Of a stretch of DNA of 64,000 bases, positions 31,889 to 59,021 are shown in pieces. The position numbers and the translations under genes are program-made. The stretch lies in the sequence record NC_049851.1. One strand, written 5' to 3'. The notes under the pieces were generated by a model that searched no databases, was not told the DNA's origin, and was given only the letters and a program-made list of their open reading frames with translations. How positions within the stretch are numbered: the stretch's first letter is position 1; each line of letters opens with the position of its first letter.

Positions 31889-33406
31889 TTACACAACTTT
31901 GAACTTTTGCGACGCCTTTGCAGATTCGTACGCGCGGTCCTTCTCGATTGCGGGTATCAGGCTCTCCAGATCGGCCAGAATCTTGCCCTTCGGCTTCTTC
32001 TGCCACGAGCCGAGTTGCTTCAGGTGGGCTTGTTGCTCCTTCAGCTTGATCTTCATCTGCTCTTGATCCATGCGCGACCACCGACGCGTCGGCAGATCGA
32101 GAAGCTGCTTGGCCTGTTCAGCCGTCACCTTCATCAACTTGACGAGCATCGCGTCCGGGTCTTTCGCTTTAAGGGCCTTCATCAGCGAATCGACGTGATC
32201 GACAGCGTAGATCAAGAGTTCCGTGTACGCAATAGCGGCCTCTTGCTTCTTGATCCGGTACGCCAACGATTTCAGTTCGAGTTCGGTGCGCAATTCGAGC
32301 CACTTCTTCAGCAACTCAGGAATCGAGAGCGATAGGAAGTGGGTTTCAAAGTCGATCTTGCCATCGTTCTCGATGACTTCGCGCAGCGTCACGTTGATCT
32401 TGAACGAACGGTTCTGAAGCGTGGCCTTTCGTACCTTCTCGACGAATTTGTCAAACTGCGCGTAGTTGTACGCGGGTTTGCACTCGATGGAGTAGGTGGT
32501 GCTCCCCTTCGAGTTGTAGCAGCGCTGCGTCTCCGGGAACGTGCGTACCTTCTGCACGAACTTCTCGATGTTGGTGCCCGGGGGCCAATCACTGATCGTG
32601 ATCCGCTTGTTATCGCGGTCGATATCGAGCAGAGATTCGAACTGCACCTTACCCTTGCTCGTCTCGAACATGGAGAGCCAACCCTTCTGGTTCTCCTTGG
32701 TCTTGACGAGTTGGCCACCGTACTTGTGCGAGTACTTCAGCGTCTTCGCGTAGTCACGCGCCGTCAGGTCTTCACCCTTCAGCATCCGTTGCAGGATCGC
32801 TACCACGGATTCCGGTGTGAACGTCGGCAGGTGCGTCGTGATGCCGACGCCGATACCCTCACCGCCGTTCAGCAACACGTTCGGAAGCTGGGCCGGAAGC
32901 GTCACCGGCTCGATCTCCGAATCATCGAAGTTCGGGACGAACGTCGTCACGTCCTTGTGGATGTAGTCCGGTTGCATGAACGACAGCCCGTACTGGCTCA
33001 TGCGTGTGTTCGTGTATCGCGCGGCTGCTGCACCGTCGACCATCGAACCCCAGTTGCCGTCACCCAGCATTGTCGGGCTGCTCTGGTTCACGAGCGTGAC
33101 CAGTGCATCGTATGCCGCGCCGTCACCGTGCGGGTGGTACTTACCGATCACGTCACCAACGAGACGAGCCGATTTGATGAAACGCTTCTCCTGATGGGAT
33201 GCAGCCCACAGGATACGGCGGTGCACTGGTTTCAGGCCGTCGAACAGGTCGGGAACCGAACGGTCGAGGTTCACGGTCACGCCGTAGACCTTCATGTTGC
33301 GGTTGCCGAAATCGCGCAGCGTCTCGTGGCCGAGGTTGCGGTCTTCACCGGGGGCCCGGGCCGAAGCCCCCTTCTTCGTCTTCAACGTATCCTTCTTCGT
33401 TGCCAT
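31889..33406 (-). CDS. gyrA: type II topoisomerase subunit A (GyrA/ParC-like), no C-terminal pinwheel
   Basis: RSVPDLFDGLKPVHRRILW, KSARLVGDVIGKYHPHGD, AAARYT (catalytic Tyr); only 505 aa. Confidence 0.92.
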   Translation of the reverse strand: MATKKDTLKTKKGASARAPGEDRNLGHETLRDFGNRNMKVYGVTVNLDRSVPDLFDGLKPVHRRILWAASHQEKRFIKSARLVGDVIGKYHPHGDGAAYDALVTLVNQSSPTMLGDGNWGSMVDGAAAARYTNTRMSQYGLSFMQPDYIHKDVTTFVPNFDDSEIEPVTLPAQLPNVLLNGGEGIGVGITTHLPTFTPESVVAILQRMLKGEDLTARDYAKTLKYSHKYGGQLVKTKENQKGWLSMFETSKGKVQFESLLDIDRDNKRITISDWPPGTNIEKFVQKVRTFPETQRCYNSKGSTTYSIECKPAYNYAQFDKFVEKVRKATLQNRSFKINVTLREVIENDGKIDFETHFLSLSIPELLKKWLELRTELELKSLAYRIKKQEAAIAYTELLIYAVDHVDSLMKALKAKDPDAMLVKLMKVTAEQAKQLLDLPTRRWSRMDQEQMKIKLKEQQAHLKQLGSWQKKPKGKILADLESLIPAIEKDRAYESAKASQKFKVV

Positions 33407-35997
33407 TACTTCGCCTTCTTCGATGCGACCTTCTTAGCCGCAGGTTTAGCCGTTGCTGCTTCCTTCTTTACTGCAACCTTCTTGGCAGCAGGTTTGGCCG
33501 GAGCCTCGTCTTCGTCGGCCGCGCTGTCGCTCGGGAGACCCAGCATCTGGCGTCGGTAGTCCACGTCGTCGGCCATCAGCTTCACGAAGTCCACGTGATC
33601 AGCGTCGCCTAGCGGCTTGATCTTGATCATGTGTCGCGTGTCCGGGTCCATGATGAGAGTCCGAATCAGACCTTCGTTCATTTCCCCGTAGCCCTTGACG
33701 TGGCGCACGTCCACGTTCTTGATGCCCTTGGCGGCCAGCTTGCGCTGCACTTCACCGAGCGTCGCGCCCACGAACAACTCGCCCTTCGCCTCGGCGTAGA
33801 ACTCCGGTGCGTTTGCCACGTACACCATGCCGCGCTCGAACAGGCCGGGCAGGAACTTGTACATCAGCGCCAGAAGCAGGCTGTTGATGTGACAGTTCGC
33901 GCTCATGATACCGGAAGGAAGCATGAAGTGGTGATACTTCGGGACCGTCAGGCAGTACACGGGCACCGGCTCCGCTTGCTCCTGCACACGCAGTTTCGAG
34001 ACGGCCACGAAACCAAGGCCCGTGCTCTTGTCCTGCTTGTTCCAGTCGCGCTTGTCCAGCTTGTCGTTGTACGGGTAGTACAGGCGGTCACCGATACGCA
34101 TGTCGCGCGCACGGCAGAACGCGAGGTCCGCGTTGCCCGGGAACGGGAGCAGTTCGCGACCACGGTTGGCTTGCGTCCGGATCACCACGAATTTGTGGTC
34201 TTCGCTAACGCGGTACTTCGTGCCGTGTGCCTCGATTGCCACCAGCTTCGTGACGTTGCGAACCAGCGACGCCGTTGCAGGTGCCCAGATTTCGCGGCCG
34301 TGATGGAAGACCGGGACCTCGAAGCCGTTCGGGTTGCGCGACAGCGACTCGATGCTCACCTGATGCGGTTCGGCACCAAGATCACCGTCATCCTGACGAC
34401 GTACAGTGATCATGGTTTCCCCGACGAACGGGCCGTCCGGGTCCGGGTCGGCCAGACAGATGATCTTGCCGACTTGCAGCTTGGTCATCGGGTCTGCGGC
34501 GTTCACGTCGTAGCCAATCGCGGCCAGAATGTTCAGAATTTCTTCTGATTCGAGAGCCTTTTCCGGTTGGCGCAAGGCGTTCAAAACCTTCCCACGCAGG
34601 GGCAGAATAGCCTGATACGGGAAACGGGCTTCCCGTACCTTACCGGCCGCCGAATCCCCTTCCAGCAGGAACAGTTCGCGATGCTCGACCTTGGTCTTCA
34701 GGTCGTACGACGCGTACTTGGCAGGCAGGCCCTGACGCTTGATCTTGTTCAGGTCCGTAGCCGCCTTTTTAGACATCACGAACTTGGTCTTGAGTTCGGA
34801 GACTCGCGACGCACGATCCGCGATGCGTTGTGCCAGCGCCTTGTTCCCGTTGAAGAACTTGGTCGCGGCCTCCACGAGCATGGCCTCGAAGGGCTCACCC
34901 GCCCGGTCGTCTGCAAGCTTCGCCTTGTCCTGCGACGTGAACGTTGCCTTCGACAGGTACATGTTGACGAGGCCGACCATGCCATCCTTCAGATCGGGCT
35001 CGCGGAACGCGGGGACTTCTTTGGCCTTGCCGTCGACCTTGATCTTCTTGGTCTTGATCCACGGCTTGAGTGCAGTGTACAGCGCACCCGACACAGCATC
35101 GACGTGCTTACCGCCGCTCGATTGGTGCAGGCCGTTCGTGTAGCCCTTGACCTGATAGCCTTCTGCGTTCGTGAACGCGACGATCACGTCCGCCAGCGCC
35201 GACTTGTATTCGAACATGTCGCGCTCGCCTTCGCACTTCAGTTCGGTCAGCGTCTTTTCGATGTACTCGACAGGGCCGCGCTTGCTGAAGAACTCCTTCA
35301 TGCCCTTCGCGTTGCCGATGGAGACGCGGAAGCCCGGCGTCAGATAGGCTGCGAGTTCAGCCCATTGCGTCGCGACCGATGACGGGAACGACTTGGCGCT
35401 GAACACCTTGTAGTTCGGGAGAACCTTGATCAGCGTGCCCTTCTCAGCCTTAGTGCCGTCCCACTTCTTGGGGGCGGACTTCAGCTTCGTGACTTCGGTA
35501 GCCAGATGGCCGTTCTTGAACGCGATGTAGTACCACGAACCTTCGAAGAAAGTCCACACTTCCATCGAATCGGACAGCGCGTTCGTGGCCTTGACGCCTA
35601 CGCCGTGCGTGCCGCGCGAGGCCGCGTATGCGGCATCCGCCTCGAACTTGCCGGACGTGTGCAGTTCCCCGAAGATGGCCTGCATCGTCGGCGTCTTGAT
35701 GGTGGTCTTCTTGCCGTTGATCACCATGCTGTGCGTCTTGATACCCTGCGGGATACCGTTCGCATCGTCGGACACCCAGAAGGTGCCGTTGTCCGCAAAC
35801 AGCGTGACGCTCGTGCCACGGCCCGCCAAATGCTCGTCGATTGCGTTGTCCAGCATTTCCCGGACGATGACCCAGAGCGCCGAGGCATCGGTGCCCCCGA
35901 TGTACATGCCGGGATTTTTTTGAATGTTTTCAGGAAAGCGCAGGGTGTTGATGTCTGCGCTATCGTATTTCTTGGACTGCTTCTTCACTTCAGCCAT
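33406..35997 (-). CDS. gyrB: type II topoisomerase subunit B (GyrB/ParE-like) containing an intein
   Basis: GMYIG, EMLDNAIDE, DDANGIP, SRGTHGVG, LLEGDSA, PLRGKVLN, DPDPDG, KGYGEM. Confidence 0.92.
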   Translation of the reverse strand: MAEVKKQSKKYDSADINTLRFPENIQKNPGMYIGGTDASALWVIVREMLDNAIDEHLAGRGTSVTLFADNGTFWVSDDANGIPQGIKTHSMVINGKKTTIKTPTMQAIFGELHTSGKFEADAAYAASRGTHGVGVKATNALSDSMEVWTFFEGSWYYIAFKNGHLATEVTKLKSAPKKWDGTKAEKGTLIKVLPNYKVFSAKSFPSSVATQWAELAAYLTPGFRVSIGNAKGMKEFFSKRGPVEYIEKTLTELKCEGERDMFEYKSALADVIVAFTNAEGYQVKGYTNGLHQSSGGKHVDAVSGALYTALKPWIKTKKIKVDGKAKEVPAFREPDLKDGMVGLVNMYLSKATFTSQDKAKLADDRAGEPFEAMLVEAATKFFNGNKALAQRIADRASRVSELKTKFVMSKKAATDLNKIKRQGLPAKYASYDLKTKVEHRELFLLEGDSAAGKVREARFPYQAILPLRGKVLNALRQPEKALESEEILNILAAIGYDVNAADPMTKLQVGKIICLADPDPDGPFVGETMITVRRQDDGDLGAEPHQVSIESLSRNPNGFEVPVFHHGREIWAPATASLVRNVTKLVAIEAHGTKYRVSEDHKFVVIRTQANRGRELLPFPGNADLAFCRARDMRIGDRLYYPYNDKLDKRDWNKQDKSTGLGFVAVSKLRVQEQAEPVPVYCLTVPKYHHFMLPSGIMSANCHINSLLLALMYKFLPGLFERGMVYVANAPEFYAEAKGELFVGATLGEVQRKLAAKGIKNVDVRHVKGYGEMNEGLIRTLIMDPDTRHMIKIKPLGDADHVDFVKLMADDVDYRRQMLGLPSDSAADEDEAPAKPAAKKVAVKKEAATAKPAAKKVASKKAK
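33895..34431 (-). mobile_element. 179-aa mini-intein, class-3-like (N-terminal Pro, block F Cys)
   Basis: DG|PFVGETMITV ... SEDHKF ... PVYCLTVPKYHHFMLPSGIMSAN|CHINSLL; removal restores DG-(C/S)HI.LL. Confidence 0.85.
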
Positions 35998-58694: not shown

Positions 58695-59021
58695 ATGAAC
58701 GCAATCAAGAACGCGACCGCAACAACCTTCGACGCAGATGTCATGAAGGGTGAAGGTCTCATCCTCGTAGACTTCTGGGCACCGTGGTGCGGCCCGTGCA
58801 AGATGCTGGCTCCGACACTGGACAAGATCGCACAAGAGCGCGACGACCTCCAGATCGTGAAGGTCAACGTCGACGAGGAATCCGAGAACGAAGTCGCAAA
58901 GACGTTCGGAGTCCGTGGTATTCCGTCACTCATGCTCGTGCGAAACGGTGCAGTGATCGCGCAACGCGCTGGAGCACTGGCCAAGTCGCAACTGGAAGCA
59001 TGGATCGACGCGAACAAGTAA
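58695..59021 (+). CDS. trxA: thioredoxin
   Basis: LVDFWAPWCGPCK, VRGIPSL. Confidence 0.95.
   Translation: MNAIKNATATTFDADVMKGEGLILVDFWAPWCGPCKMLAPTLDKIAQERDDLQIVKVNVDEESENEVAKTFGVRGIPSLMLVRNGAVIAQRAGALAKSQLEAWIDANK

What the first reader, a model, noticed from the sequence alone, without database searches (positions are those of the whole stretch)
33895..34431. Pro-initiated class-3-like mini-intein in the TOPRIM motif of phage GyrB
Seen: the intein starts with Pro (no N-terminal nucleophile), has Cys at block F position 4 (VYCLTV), ends S-A-N with Ala instead of the penultimate His, and has Cys at +1. It is 179 aa with no endonuclease. Known: class 3 inteins use a Trp-Cys-Thr triad and a branched thioester at the block F Cys; here the Trp position is Phe (DHKF) and Thr is Ser. 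It interrupts the DxDxDG metal-binding region, so splicing should be essential. Inference: a variant mechanism and a possible redox switch on replication; the phage encodes its own thioredoxin.
Basis: partly seen in the sequence, partly recalled or inferred. Interest (0 to 1): 0.68.

Follow-up and report, generated by a model that had tools for sequence, protein, structure and literature searches.

The report
Class-3-type mini-intein in phage GyrB
The topoisomerase (GyrB-like) gene of Burkholderia jumbo phage BcepSauron is interrupted at its metal-binding site by a real, conserved 179-residue self-splicing intein that has no nucleophile at its first residue. It most likely splices through an internal cysteine, so it is a new natural variant of the known "class 3" inteins, not a new mechanism.

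Summary
Window 33895-34431 (- strand) encodes a 179-aa mini-intein inserted exactly between the Gly of DPDPDG and the Cys of CHIN in the TOPRIM motif of the BcepSauron GyrB-like protein. The intein-less relative in phage BCSR5 reads DPDPDG-CHIN with nothing in between.

The model is a confident HINT fold (pLDDT 92.5), and every top structural match is an intein.

About 48 metagenomic and phage GyrBs, including Ralstonia phage phiRSL1, carry the same intein at the same site. Their residues are:
- Pro1, His B:10, Cys F:4, Ser G:5, Asn G:7 and Cys+1: essentially invariant.
- B:12: Phe 31, Trp 17, Leu 1.
- G:6: never His.

Sauron and Saruman differ by 8 bases in the intein, all synonymous.

These features fit the published range for class 3 inteins. 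The prototype itself starts with Pro1, its W-to-F mutant still splices, its penultimate His is dispensable, and Bvi IcmO has Cys+1. I read it as a class-3-type variant, not a new mechanism.

The redox/thioredoxin idea is untested, and co-occurrence does not support it: four other intein-bearing phage genomes lack a thioredoxin. The same site also holds a second Pro1 type, a related Cys1 intein with an HNH endonuclease, and a canonical class 1 intein. I found no published description.

The parts
33406..35997 (-). GyrB-like type IIA topoisomerase precursor gene (863 aa, BcepSauron_169), including the intein
   Evidence: ORF; translation. Pfam HATPase_c, DNA_gyraseB, Toprim and DNA_gyraseB_C, and NCBIfam gyrB/parE matches split in two stretches. 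100% identical to MK552141 95406-97997.
34432..35997 (-). N-extein (residues 1-522), ending ...IICLADPDPDG (TOPRIM DxDxDG)
   Evidence: The Pfam Toprim match covers 441-522, profile positions 1-69 of 96. The alignment to intein-less BCSR5 GyrB runs up to DPDPDG.
33895..34431 (-). 179-aa mini-intein (residues 523-701) with a HINT fold and no endonuclease domain
   Evidence: Translation; TIGR01443 above its cut-off. AF2 model pLDDT 92.5, and all top Foldseek matches are inteins, BIL or Hedgehog domains. 48 homologues sit at the same site. All 8 differences from Saruman are synonymous.
34429..34431 (-). Pro1 (block A:1), a non-nucleophilic first intein residue
   Evidence: CCG codon read on the DNA. 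Pro in 48 of 48 aligned family members.
34189..34197 (-). Block B: His B:10, Lys, Phe B:12 (H-K-F). Ser B:7 lies 9 bases upstream in the gene.
   Evidence: His in 48 of 49 rows. B:12 is Phe 31, Trp 17, Leu 1. B:7 is Ser 32, Asp 13, Thr 3. The His aligns with the block B His of a solved BIL domain.
33952..33954 (-). Cys F:4 (residue 682, in VYCLTV), the proposed initiating nucleophile and first branch point
   Evidence: TGC codon. Cys in 48 of 49 rows; the exception is a decayed free-standing copy. It aligns with the Asp of VYDL in the class 1 Pho RadA intein.
33895..33903 (-). Block G: Ser G:5, Ala G:6, Asn G:7 (intein C-terminus)
   Evidence: Codons read. Ser in 48 of 49 rows and Asn in 48 of 49. 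G:6 is Ser 31, Ala 9, Gly 7, Lys 2, and never His.
33892..33894 (-). Cys+1 (residue 702), first C-extein residue and second branch point
   Evidence: TGT codon. Cys in all intein-bearing relatives. The same position in intein-less clade members is H, Y, G, W, A, L, S or C.
33409..33894 (-). C-extein (residues 702-863): CHINSLL..., the rest of TOPRIM, the GyrB C-terminal domain and a Lys/Ala-rich tail
   Evidence: phmmer matches to solved GyrB/ParE chains start at residue 1-2. Pfam DNA_gyraseB_C covers 760-818.

Best explanation
The insert is a functional mini-intein that splices by the class 3 route.

Proposed steps:
1. Pro1 cannot undergo an N-S acyl shift, so the thiol of Cys F:4 (residue 682), helped by His B:10 and packed against Phe B:12, attacks the Gly522-Pro523 peptide bond. 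The N-extein moves onto a thioester branch at block F.
2. Cys+1 (residue 702) takes the N-extein over by trans-thioesterification, giving the block G branch.
3. Asn701 cyclises and releases the intein, without help from a penultimate His.
4. An S-N shift forms the Gly-Cys peptide bond and completes the DPDPDG-CHIN TOPRIM motif of an active phage topoisomerase II B subunit.

Shown here: the insert, its exact boundaries, the HINT fold, conservation of every residue the route needs, purifying selection, and mostly vertical inheritance in one jumbo-phage GyrB clade.

Inferred: that splicing occurs, and the order of nucleophilic attacks. These rest on published class 3 biochemistry.
For: - Exact empty site in BCSR5 GyrB and in seven IMG/VR relatives.
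- Confident HINT model; all top structural matches are inteins.
- In 48 intact relatives that are only 25-68% identical to this stretch, Pro1, His B:10, Cys F:4, Ser G:5, Asn G:7 and Cys+1 are essentially invariant. The two splice junctions were picked as the most conserved stretches of the whole GyrB alignment.
- Cys+1 is kept only where the intein is present. Intein-less relatives have H, Y, G, W, A, L, S or C at that position.
- All 8 Sauron/Saruman differences in the intein are synonymous. Mean pairwise identity is 55% for the intein and 61% for the extein.
- Block B position 7 is Ser or Asp rather than the class 1/2 Thr, as in MP-Be (Ser62) and Msm DnaBi1 (Asp62).
- Literature: the class 3 prototype begins with Pro1, needs Cys F:4 absolutely, tolerates W67F partly, and tolerates loss of the penultimate His (PMC2807308). 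In Bvi IcmO, a natural Cys+1 cannot replace Cys F:4 (PMC5222942).
Against: - No biochemical data exist for this intein or any family member.
- Two of the three residues of the class 3 W-C-T signature are substituted here (Phe, Ser).
- Cys+1 is present, so a direct class-2-type attack cannot be excluded from sequence alone.
- No specific sequence or structural affinity to known class 3 inteins was detected. hhalign against MP-Be found nothing. The best solved relatives are class 1 (Pho RadA); the class 3 AceL NrdHF intein ranks 44th.
- A related same-site intein has both Cys1 and Cys F:4, so Cys F:4 could in principle be an inherited non-initiating residue.
- I could not read model coordinates, so thiol-to-junction distances were not measured.
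Confidence: 0.7

Rival explanations
1. Class-2-like splicing. Cys+1 attacks the Gly-Pro junction directly, as in KlbA inteins, and Cys F:4 plays only the coordinating role that Asp F:4 has in class 1/2 inteins.
For: Cys+1 is invariant in the family and is the usual nucleophile for N-junction attack in other classes. There is no Trp B:12 or Thr G:5 in this intein. No detectable affinity to known class 3 inteins.
Against: In the only tested natural Cys+1 intein with Cys F:4 (Bvi IcmO), Cys+1 could not start the reaction (PMC5222942). According to PMC2807308, Asp is the common F:4 residue of standard inteins and the Ala1 KlbA (class 2) inteins lack the WCT triplet. Cys at F:4 is invariant across sequences as little as about 25% identical. 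B:7 is Ser or Asp, not Thr.
Confidence: 0.15
2. The intein is a selected redox switch. Under oxidising conditions Cys F:4 and Cys+1 (or another Cys) form a disulfide, which holds the topoisomerase as an inactive precursor. The phage's own thioredoxin reduces it and licenses replication.
For: There are two invariant catalytic cysteines. The class 3 Msm DnaBi1 intein is reversibly blocked by a disulfide at its F:4 Cys (PMC6195587). BcepSauron encodes a thioredoxin.
Against: phiRSL1 and three near-complete intein-bearing jumbo phages have no PF00085 thioredoxin, so the pairing is not conserved. The only other intein cysteine (residue 627) is not conserved. Any two-cysteine intein is oxidant-sensitive in vitro, which does not show a selected function. 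Nothing here measures redox behaviour.
Confidence: 0.1
3. The insert no longer splices. It is a decayed intein tolerated as an insertion domain, or the gene is dead.
For: The Pfam intein model scores below its cut-off. The penultimate His and Trp B:12 are missing. Free-standing decayed copies of this intein family exist (P0046, P0053).
Against: All catalytic residues are invariant in 48 relatives, whereas the decayed free-standing copies have lost them together. Only synonymous changes separate Sauron and Saruman in the intein. Cys+1 is conserved only with the intein. A 179-aa insert between DxDxDG and HI would split the TOPRIM fold.
Confidence: 0.04

Closest known systems
Class 3 inteins, prototype mycobacteriophage Bethlehem 'DnaB' (terminase gp11) intein (Tori et al. 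2010, PMC2807308)
   Same: Phage origin. Pro at position 1. Cys at F:4. His B:10. Ser at B:7. Asn at the C-terminus. The penultimate residue is not critical.
   Different: Here B:12 is Phe (Trp in a third of relatives), G:5 is Ser rather than Thr, G:6 is never His, and +1 is Cys rather than Thr/Ser. This is a mini-intein with no LAGLIDADG domain. The host is the GyrB TOPRIM motif rather than an ATPase P-loop. No detectable specific sequence similarity.
Burkholderia vietnamiensis Bvi IcmO class 3 mini-intein (Tori and Perler 2016, PMC5222942)
   Same: A mini-intein without an N-terminal nucleophile, with Cys F:4 and a natural Cys+1, so both branched intermediates are thioesters. Burkholderia-associated.
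   Different: Bvi IcmO has the full W-C-T signature and sits in a plasmid IcmO protein. [quoted passage not shown] Here a whole family of about 48 has it.
Msm DnaBi1 class 3 intein, an oxidative-stress sensor (Kelley et al. 2018, PMC6195587)
   Same: A class 3-type mini-intein in an essential replication protein, with a catalytic F:4 Cys that can be trapped by a disulfide.
   Different: The disulfide partner there is a non-catalytic Cys48 inside the intein, and it has W-C-T with a Ser/Thr +1. No redox data exist for the phage intein.
Same-site relatives found here: a Cys1 + HNH full-length intein (L050:3013-4356), a second Pro1 type (L045:3466-3945), and a canonical class 1 intein in P0057
   Same: All are inserted after DxDxDG of phage GyrB. 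The L050 and L045 types also have Cys F:4 and Cys+1. L050 shares blocks F/G (hhalign 87%) and is 33-64% identical to the Pro1 intein of P0055.
   Different: L050 starts with Cys and carries an HNH endonuclease. L045 has Trp B:12 and ends C-H-N. The P0057 intein has Cys1, Asp F:4, H-N and Ser+1.

Membership tests
Intein (HINT splicing domain) | HINT fold | tested here: met
   AF2 model pLDDT 92.5, pTM 0.87. The top 50 Foldseek PDB matches are inteins, BIL or Hedgehog domains, best E 7e-9.
Intein (HINT splicing domain) | In-frame insertion absent from orthologues, with the conserved host motif restored on removal | tested here: met
   BCSR5 GyrB reads DPDPDG-CHINSLL. Seven IMG/VR relatives have an empty site.
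Intein (HINT splicing domain) | Curated sequence models | tested here: inconclusive
   TIGR01443 intein_Cterm scores 21-22 bits against a cut-off of 15.6 (met). Pfam PF14890 scores 25.3 bits against a cut-off of 35.8 (not met).
Intein (HINT splicing domain) | C-terminal Asn followed by Cys/Ser/Thr at +1; His at block B:10 | tested here: met
   Asn701, Cys702 and His601 are each conserved in at least 48 of 49 rows.
Class 3 intein | No Cys/Ser/Thr at intein position 1 | tested here: met
   Pro1 here and in 48 of 48 aligned relatives. The prototype also has Pro1.
Class 3 intein | Cys at block F position 4 | tested here: met
   Cys682. Invariant in intact relatives. Aligned with the class 1 Asp F:4.
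Class 3 intein | Trp at block B position 12 | tested here: not met
   Phe603 here. Across the family: Phe 31, Trp 17, Leu 1. The W67F mutant of the prototype keeps about half its activity at 30 C.
Class 3 intein | Thr at block G position 5 | tested here: not met
   Ser699, invariant in the family. A conservative change; mutating this Thr has a minor effect in the prototype.
Class 3 intein | Ser or Thr at +1 | tested here: not met
   Cys702, as in Bvi IcmO, which splices by the class 3 route.
Class 3 intein | Absolute requirement for Cys F:4 and formation of the block F branched thioester | not testable with these tools
   Needs mutagenesis and thiolysis assays.
Class 3 intein | Sequence or phylogenetic affinity to established class 3 inteins | tested here: inconclusive
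   hhalign against the MP-Be intein gave probability 0.5%. Profile and fold searches put class 1 Pho RadA first and the class 3 AceL NrdHF intein at rank 44. No intein-wide tree was built.
Class 2 (KlbA-type) intein | No N-terminal nucleophile (KlbA inteins begin with Ala1) and no class 3 triplet, so no Cys at F:4; the usual block B Thr7/His10 activates the N-junction; Cys+1 attacks it directly | tested here: not met
   Pro1, Cys F:4 and Ser B:7. Only Cys+1 fits.
Class 1 intein | Cys/Ser/Thr at position 1 | tested here: not met
   Pro1.

The most novel reading that the evidence does not exclude
[quoted passage not shown] The series consists of:
- a Cys1 + Cys F:4 intein with an HNH endonuclease,
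- its Pro1 mini-intein relatives with W/F-C-S and no penultimate His,
- a second Pro1 type ending C-H-N,
- a canonical class 1 intein,
- empty sites.

If Pro1 forms arose from a Cys1 ancestor that already had Cys F:4, this lineage would show how class 3 chemistry evolves. That transition has been argued to be improbable (PMC7664689). The double-thioester Pro1 family might also have been kept for tens of percent of sequence divergence because it gates phage topoisomerase activity on the redox state of the infected cell.
Probability: 0.15. Interest if true: 0.65.

Novelty: new variant of a known kind. Interest (0 to 1): 0.42.

Why it matters
The GenBank records call this gene only 'type IIA topoisomerase', and I found no paper describing an intein in it. 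It matters for four reasons:
- It adds an unannotated family of about 48 class-3-type inteins in a new host protein and site, the GyrB TOPRIM motif.
- It shows that the W-C-T signature used to recognise class 3 inteins is too narrow. F/W-C-S with a non-His penultimate residue and Cys+1 is a stable natural combination.
- It gives experimenters compact 160-190-aa Pro1 inteins that leave a Gly-Cys junction.
- It offers, at a single insertion site, related Cys1 and Pro1 inteins for testing how the class 3 mechanism arose.

For phage biology, the replication topoisomerase of BcepSauron, BcepSaruman and phiRSL1 needs a post-translational maturation step.

Tried and rejected
- Single-sequence phmmer of the intein against PDB gave only noise. 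A family profile was needed.
- hhalign of the family profile against the class 3 prototype (Bethlehem gp11 intein, L021:7680-8702) found nothing usable, so no claim of common descent with known class 3 inteins is made.
- The search for related loci with the single intein found one locus. With the full-length alignment it chose the splice junctions as patterns, so it returned only intein-bearing loci. An N-extein-only alignment gave the unbiased survey.
- An alternative N-terminal boundary at Cys514 (IIC|LADPDPDG) is rejected, because intein-less relatives keep the DPDPDG stretch.
- Thioredoxin co-occurrence: tested and not found.
- No other intein or second copy exists in the BcepSauron genome.
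- Earlier notes of this scan near the site concern other genes only.
- The model's coordinates are not exposed to scripts, so the Cys F:4 to junction and Cys-Cys distances could not be measured.
- The spliced protein was deliberately not assembled. The exteins were searched separately by reference.
- The second big protein search, the read-mapping tools and the complex predictor were not used, because they could not bear on protein splicing.
Full report
**Source.** The window is part of Burkholderia phage BcepSauron, a 262.6-kb jumbo phage of B. cenocepacia. The region 33406-35997 is 100% identical to MK552141 95406-97997, annotated only as 'type IIA topoisomerase'. The sister phage BcepSaruman is 99% identical there.

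**Observation.**
- The minus-strand ORF 33406-35997 gives an 863-aa GyrB-like protein.
- It has the domains HATPase_c, DNA_gyraseB, Toprim and DNA_gyraseB_C. The NCBIfam gyrB/parE models match in two separated stretches.
SEDHKF ... VYCLTV ... GIMSAN, followed by CHIN. I checked the key codons on the DNA.
- The Pfam Toprim match stops at residue 522, profile position 69 of 96.
- The C-extein, searched alone by reference, aligns to solved GyrB/ParE chains from its first or second residue.
- The intein-less GyrB of Burkholderia phage BCSR5 (47% identical) reads ...DPDPDG|CHINSLL... with nothing in between. The boundaries are therefore exact.
- I did not build the joined (spliced) sequence. The exteins were handled separately.

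**It is an intein.**
- TIGR01443 (intein C-terminal region) scores above its cut-off. Pfam Intein_splicing matches below its cut-off.
- An AlphaFold2 model of residues 517-707, made with a 49-row alignment, has mean pLDDT 92.5 and is an all-beta HINT domain.
- All leading Foldseek matches in the PDB are inteins, bacterial intein-like domains or Hedgehog autoprocessing domains. Pho RadA intein is best at E 7e-9.
- A family profile aligns the VYCL motif with VYDL of the class 1 Pho RadA intein, and the His of HKF with the block B His of a BIL domain. This fixes Cys682 as F:4, His601 as B:10 and Phe603 as B:12.
- No endonuclease domain is present, and the phage genome holds no other intein.

**It belongs to a conserved family.**
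- A word search restricted to the intein region found 40 GyrB-like proteins of 826-1362 aa, 47-100% identical in the intein. Nearly all come from metagenomic contigs, many over 200 kb, plus Ralstonia phage phiRSL1.
- The exhaustive representative search added more distant members at 28-38% identity.
- Residue counts across 49 aligned rows:

| Position | Residues |
|---|---|
| Gly-1 | 48 |
| Pro1 | 48 |
| Thr A:6 | 49 |
| His B:10 | 48 |
| B:12 | Phe 31, Trp 17, Leu 1 |
| B:7 | Ser 32, Asp 13, Thr 3 |
| Cys F:4 | 48 |
| Ser G:5 | 48 |
| G:6 | Ser 31, Ala 9, Gly 7, Lys 2 (never His) |
| Asn G:7 | 48 |
| Cys+1 | 48 |

- The single exception row is a free-standing 180-aa decayed copy that has lost all of these residues together.
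- The splice junctions were the most conserved stretches of the whole GyrB alignment.
- Mean pairwise identity is 55% in the intein and 61% in the exteins, and the two are correlated (r = 0.48).
- Sauron and Saruman differ at 8 intein bases, all synonymous.

**Unbiased site survey.**
- I used an alignment of N-exteins only and fetched 32 IMG/VR loci. In the clade with at least 46% N-extein identity, the site after DxDxDG holds:
  - this Pro1 family (9 loci);
  - a second 160-aa Pro1 type (PVSADT..., Trp B:12, YCLDI, ending C-H-N|C; 4 loci);
  - a 448-aa intein that starts with Cys, carries an HNH endonuclease, and also has Cys F:4 and S-S-N|C (L050; Pfam PF14890 39.9 bits and HNH_3);
  - or nothing (7 loci).
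- In the empty sites, the residue equivalent to +1 is H, Y, G, W, A, L or S, and C in BCSR5. Cys at +1 is therefore kept only where the intein needs it.
- A maximum-likelihood tree of the N-exteins (quick IQ-TREE, 22 rows, 503 columns; duplicate contigs and the more distant hits L055-L062 were left out) puts the nine Pro1-family GyrBs in one supported group (SH-aLRT 97). One intein-less member lies inside it: L042, with Trp at the +1-equivalent position, a residue whose codon is one base change from a Cys codon. This fits one gain, vertical descent and an occasional precise loss.
- Another metagenomic GyrB (P0057) has a canonical class 1 intein (Cys1, Asp F:4, H-N|S) at the same site.
- The L050 intein is most similar to the Pro1 intein of P0055 at this site: 33% over the N-terminal half and 64% over blocks F/G. 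It is less similar to P0055's two class 1 inteins. It also shares blocks F/G with the family profile (hhalign 87%). Cys1 and Pro1 forms are thus close relatives.

**Mechanism.**
- With Pro at position 1 no acyl shift is possible, so either Cys F:4 or Cys+1 must attack the Gly-Pro bond.
- Published work on class 3 inteins covers every unusual feature seen here:
  - the prototype MP-Be DnaB intein begins with Pro1;
  - Cys F:4 is absolutely required;
  - W67F keeps roughly half activity at 30 C and is rescued at 15 C;
  - the penultimate His matters little;
  - B:7 is Ser (PMC2807308).
- The Bvi IcmO intein has a natural Cys+1, yet Cys+1 cannot replace Cys F:4. The order is block F branch first, then block G branch (PMC5222942).
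- I therefore take the class 3 route as most likely (0.7). The class-2-like route is the main rival (0.15).
- Against over-confidence: I found no specific sequence or fold affinity to solved or prototype class 3 inteins, and no experiment exists.

**Redox idea.**
- The class 3 Msm DnaBi1 intein is reversibly blocked by a disulfide at its F:4 Cys (PMC6195587), so sensitivity to oxidants is plausible here too.
- BcepSauron does encode a thioredoxin (window 58707-59009, +).
- However, phiRSL1, three near-complete intein-bearing IMG/VR jumbo phages and BCSR5 all lack any PF00085 match.
- The only other intein cysteine is not conserved.
- The thioredoxin link is therefore not supported, and the switch remains speculation.

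**Novelty.**
- Literature searches for BcepSauron or phiRSL1 with 'intein', for 'GyrB intein', and for intein + GyrB + Toprim found no description. The database records do not annotate it.
- Absence from the searchable library is not proof of absence.
- It is best filed as a new natural variant of class 3 inteins: F/W-C-S instead of W-C-T, no penultimate His, Cys+1, and a new host site.

Noticed in passing
L002:5570-6635 (BcepSaruman; corresponds to window ~35930-35997): Saruman has a 1043-bp insertion at the 5' end of gyrB. The original first 23 codons remain upstream, fused to or followed by a 302-aa ORF of unknown function (only weak HTH hits). The working gyrB restarts with a diverged, recoded copy of the same N-terminal codons. 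It looks like a mobile cassette or free-standing homing-endonuclease-type insertion with flank co-conversion.
   Followed up: partly
L004:938-1480 (phiRSL1 ORF332): An HNH endonuclease with an AP2 domain is annotated immediately upstream of the intein-bearing gyrB of phiRSL1. It could mobilise the endonuclease-less intein allele, but this is untested.
   Followed up: no
L045:3466-3945, L050:3013-4356, P0057 residues ~910-1051: The same GyrB site holds three other intein types: a 160-aa Pro1 intein with Trp B:12, Cys F:4 and a C-H-N|C end; a 448-aa Cys1 intein with an HNH endonuclease that also has Cys F:4 and S-S-N|C; and a canonical class 1 intein.
   Followed up: partly
P0055, P0054, P0051, P0048, P0010 (metagenomic GyrBs of 947-1362 aa): Some relatives carry two or three inteins in one GyrB. 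Besides the Pro1 intein, class 1 inteins sit after EGDSAGG and after the ATPase-domain ...SRG motif.
   Followed up: no
P0046 (180 aa), P0053 (177 aa): These are free-standing ORFs homologous to this intein family. They have lost Pro1, His B:10, Cys F:4 and the terminal Asn together, so they are orphan, catalytically dead HINT proteins.
   Followed up: no
L042 (IMG/VR 3300050821_002122): This is the only intein-less GyrB inside the Pro1-intein clade. It has Trp where the others have Cys+1, a residue whose codon is one base change from a Cys codon, as expected after a precise intein loss and release of constraint.
   Followed up: partly
window 58707-59009 (+): A phage thioredoxin gene (PF00085, 104 bits). 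It is absent from phiRSL1, BCSR5 and three related IMG/VR jumbo phages.
   Followed up: partly
window 33409-33530 (-), GyrB residues ~823-863: The GyrB C-terminus carries a Lys/Ala/Pro-rich, histone-H1-like tail (AKPAAKKVA repeats) beyond the conserved GyrB C-terminal domain. The gyrB stop overlaps the gyrA-like start by one base (ATGA at 33406).
   Followed up: no
L039:1501-3641 / L015:1901-2600: In one IMG/VR relative, the N-extein region that should hold a class 1 intein after EGDSAGG has 13 stops in the expected frame. It may be a frameshifted or intron-containing element. Not resolved.
   Followed up: no
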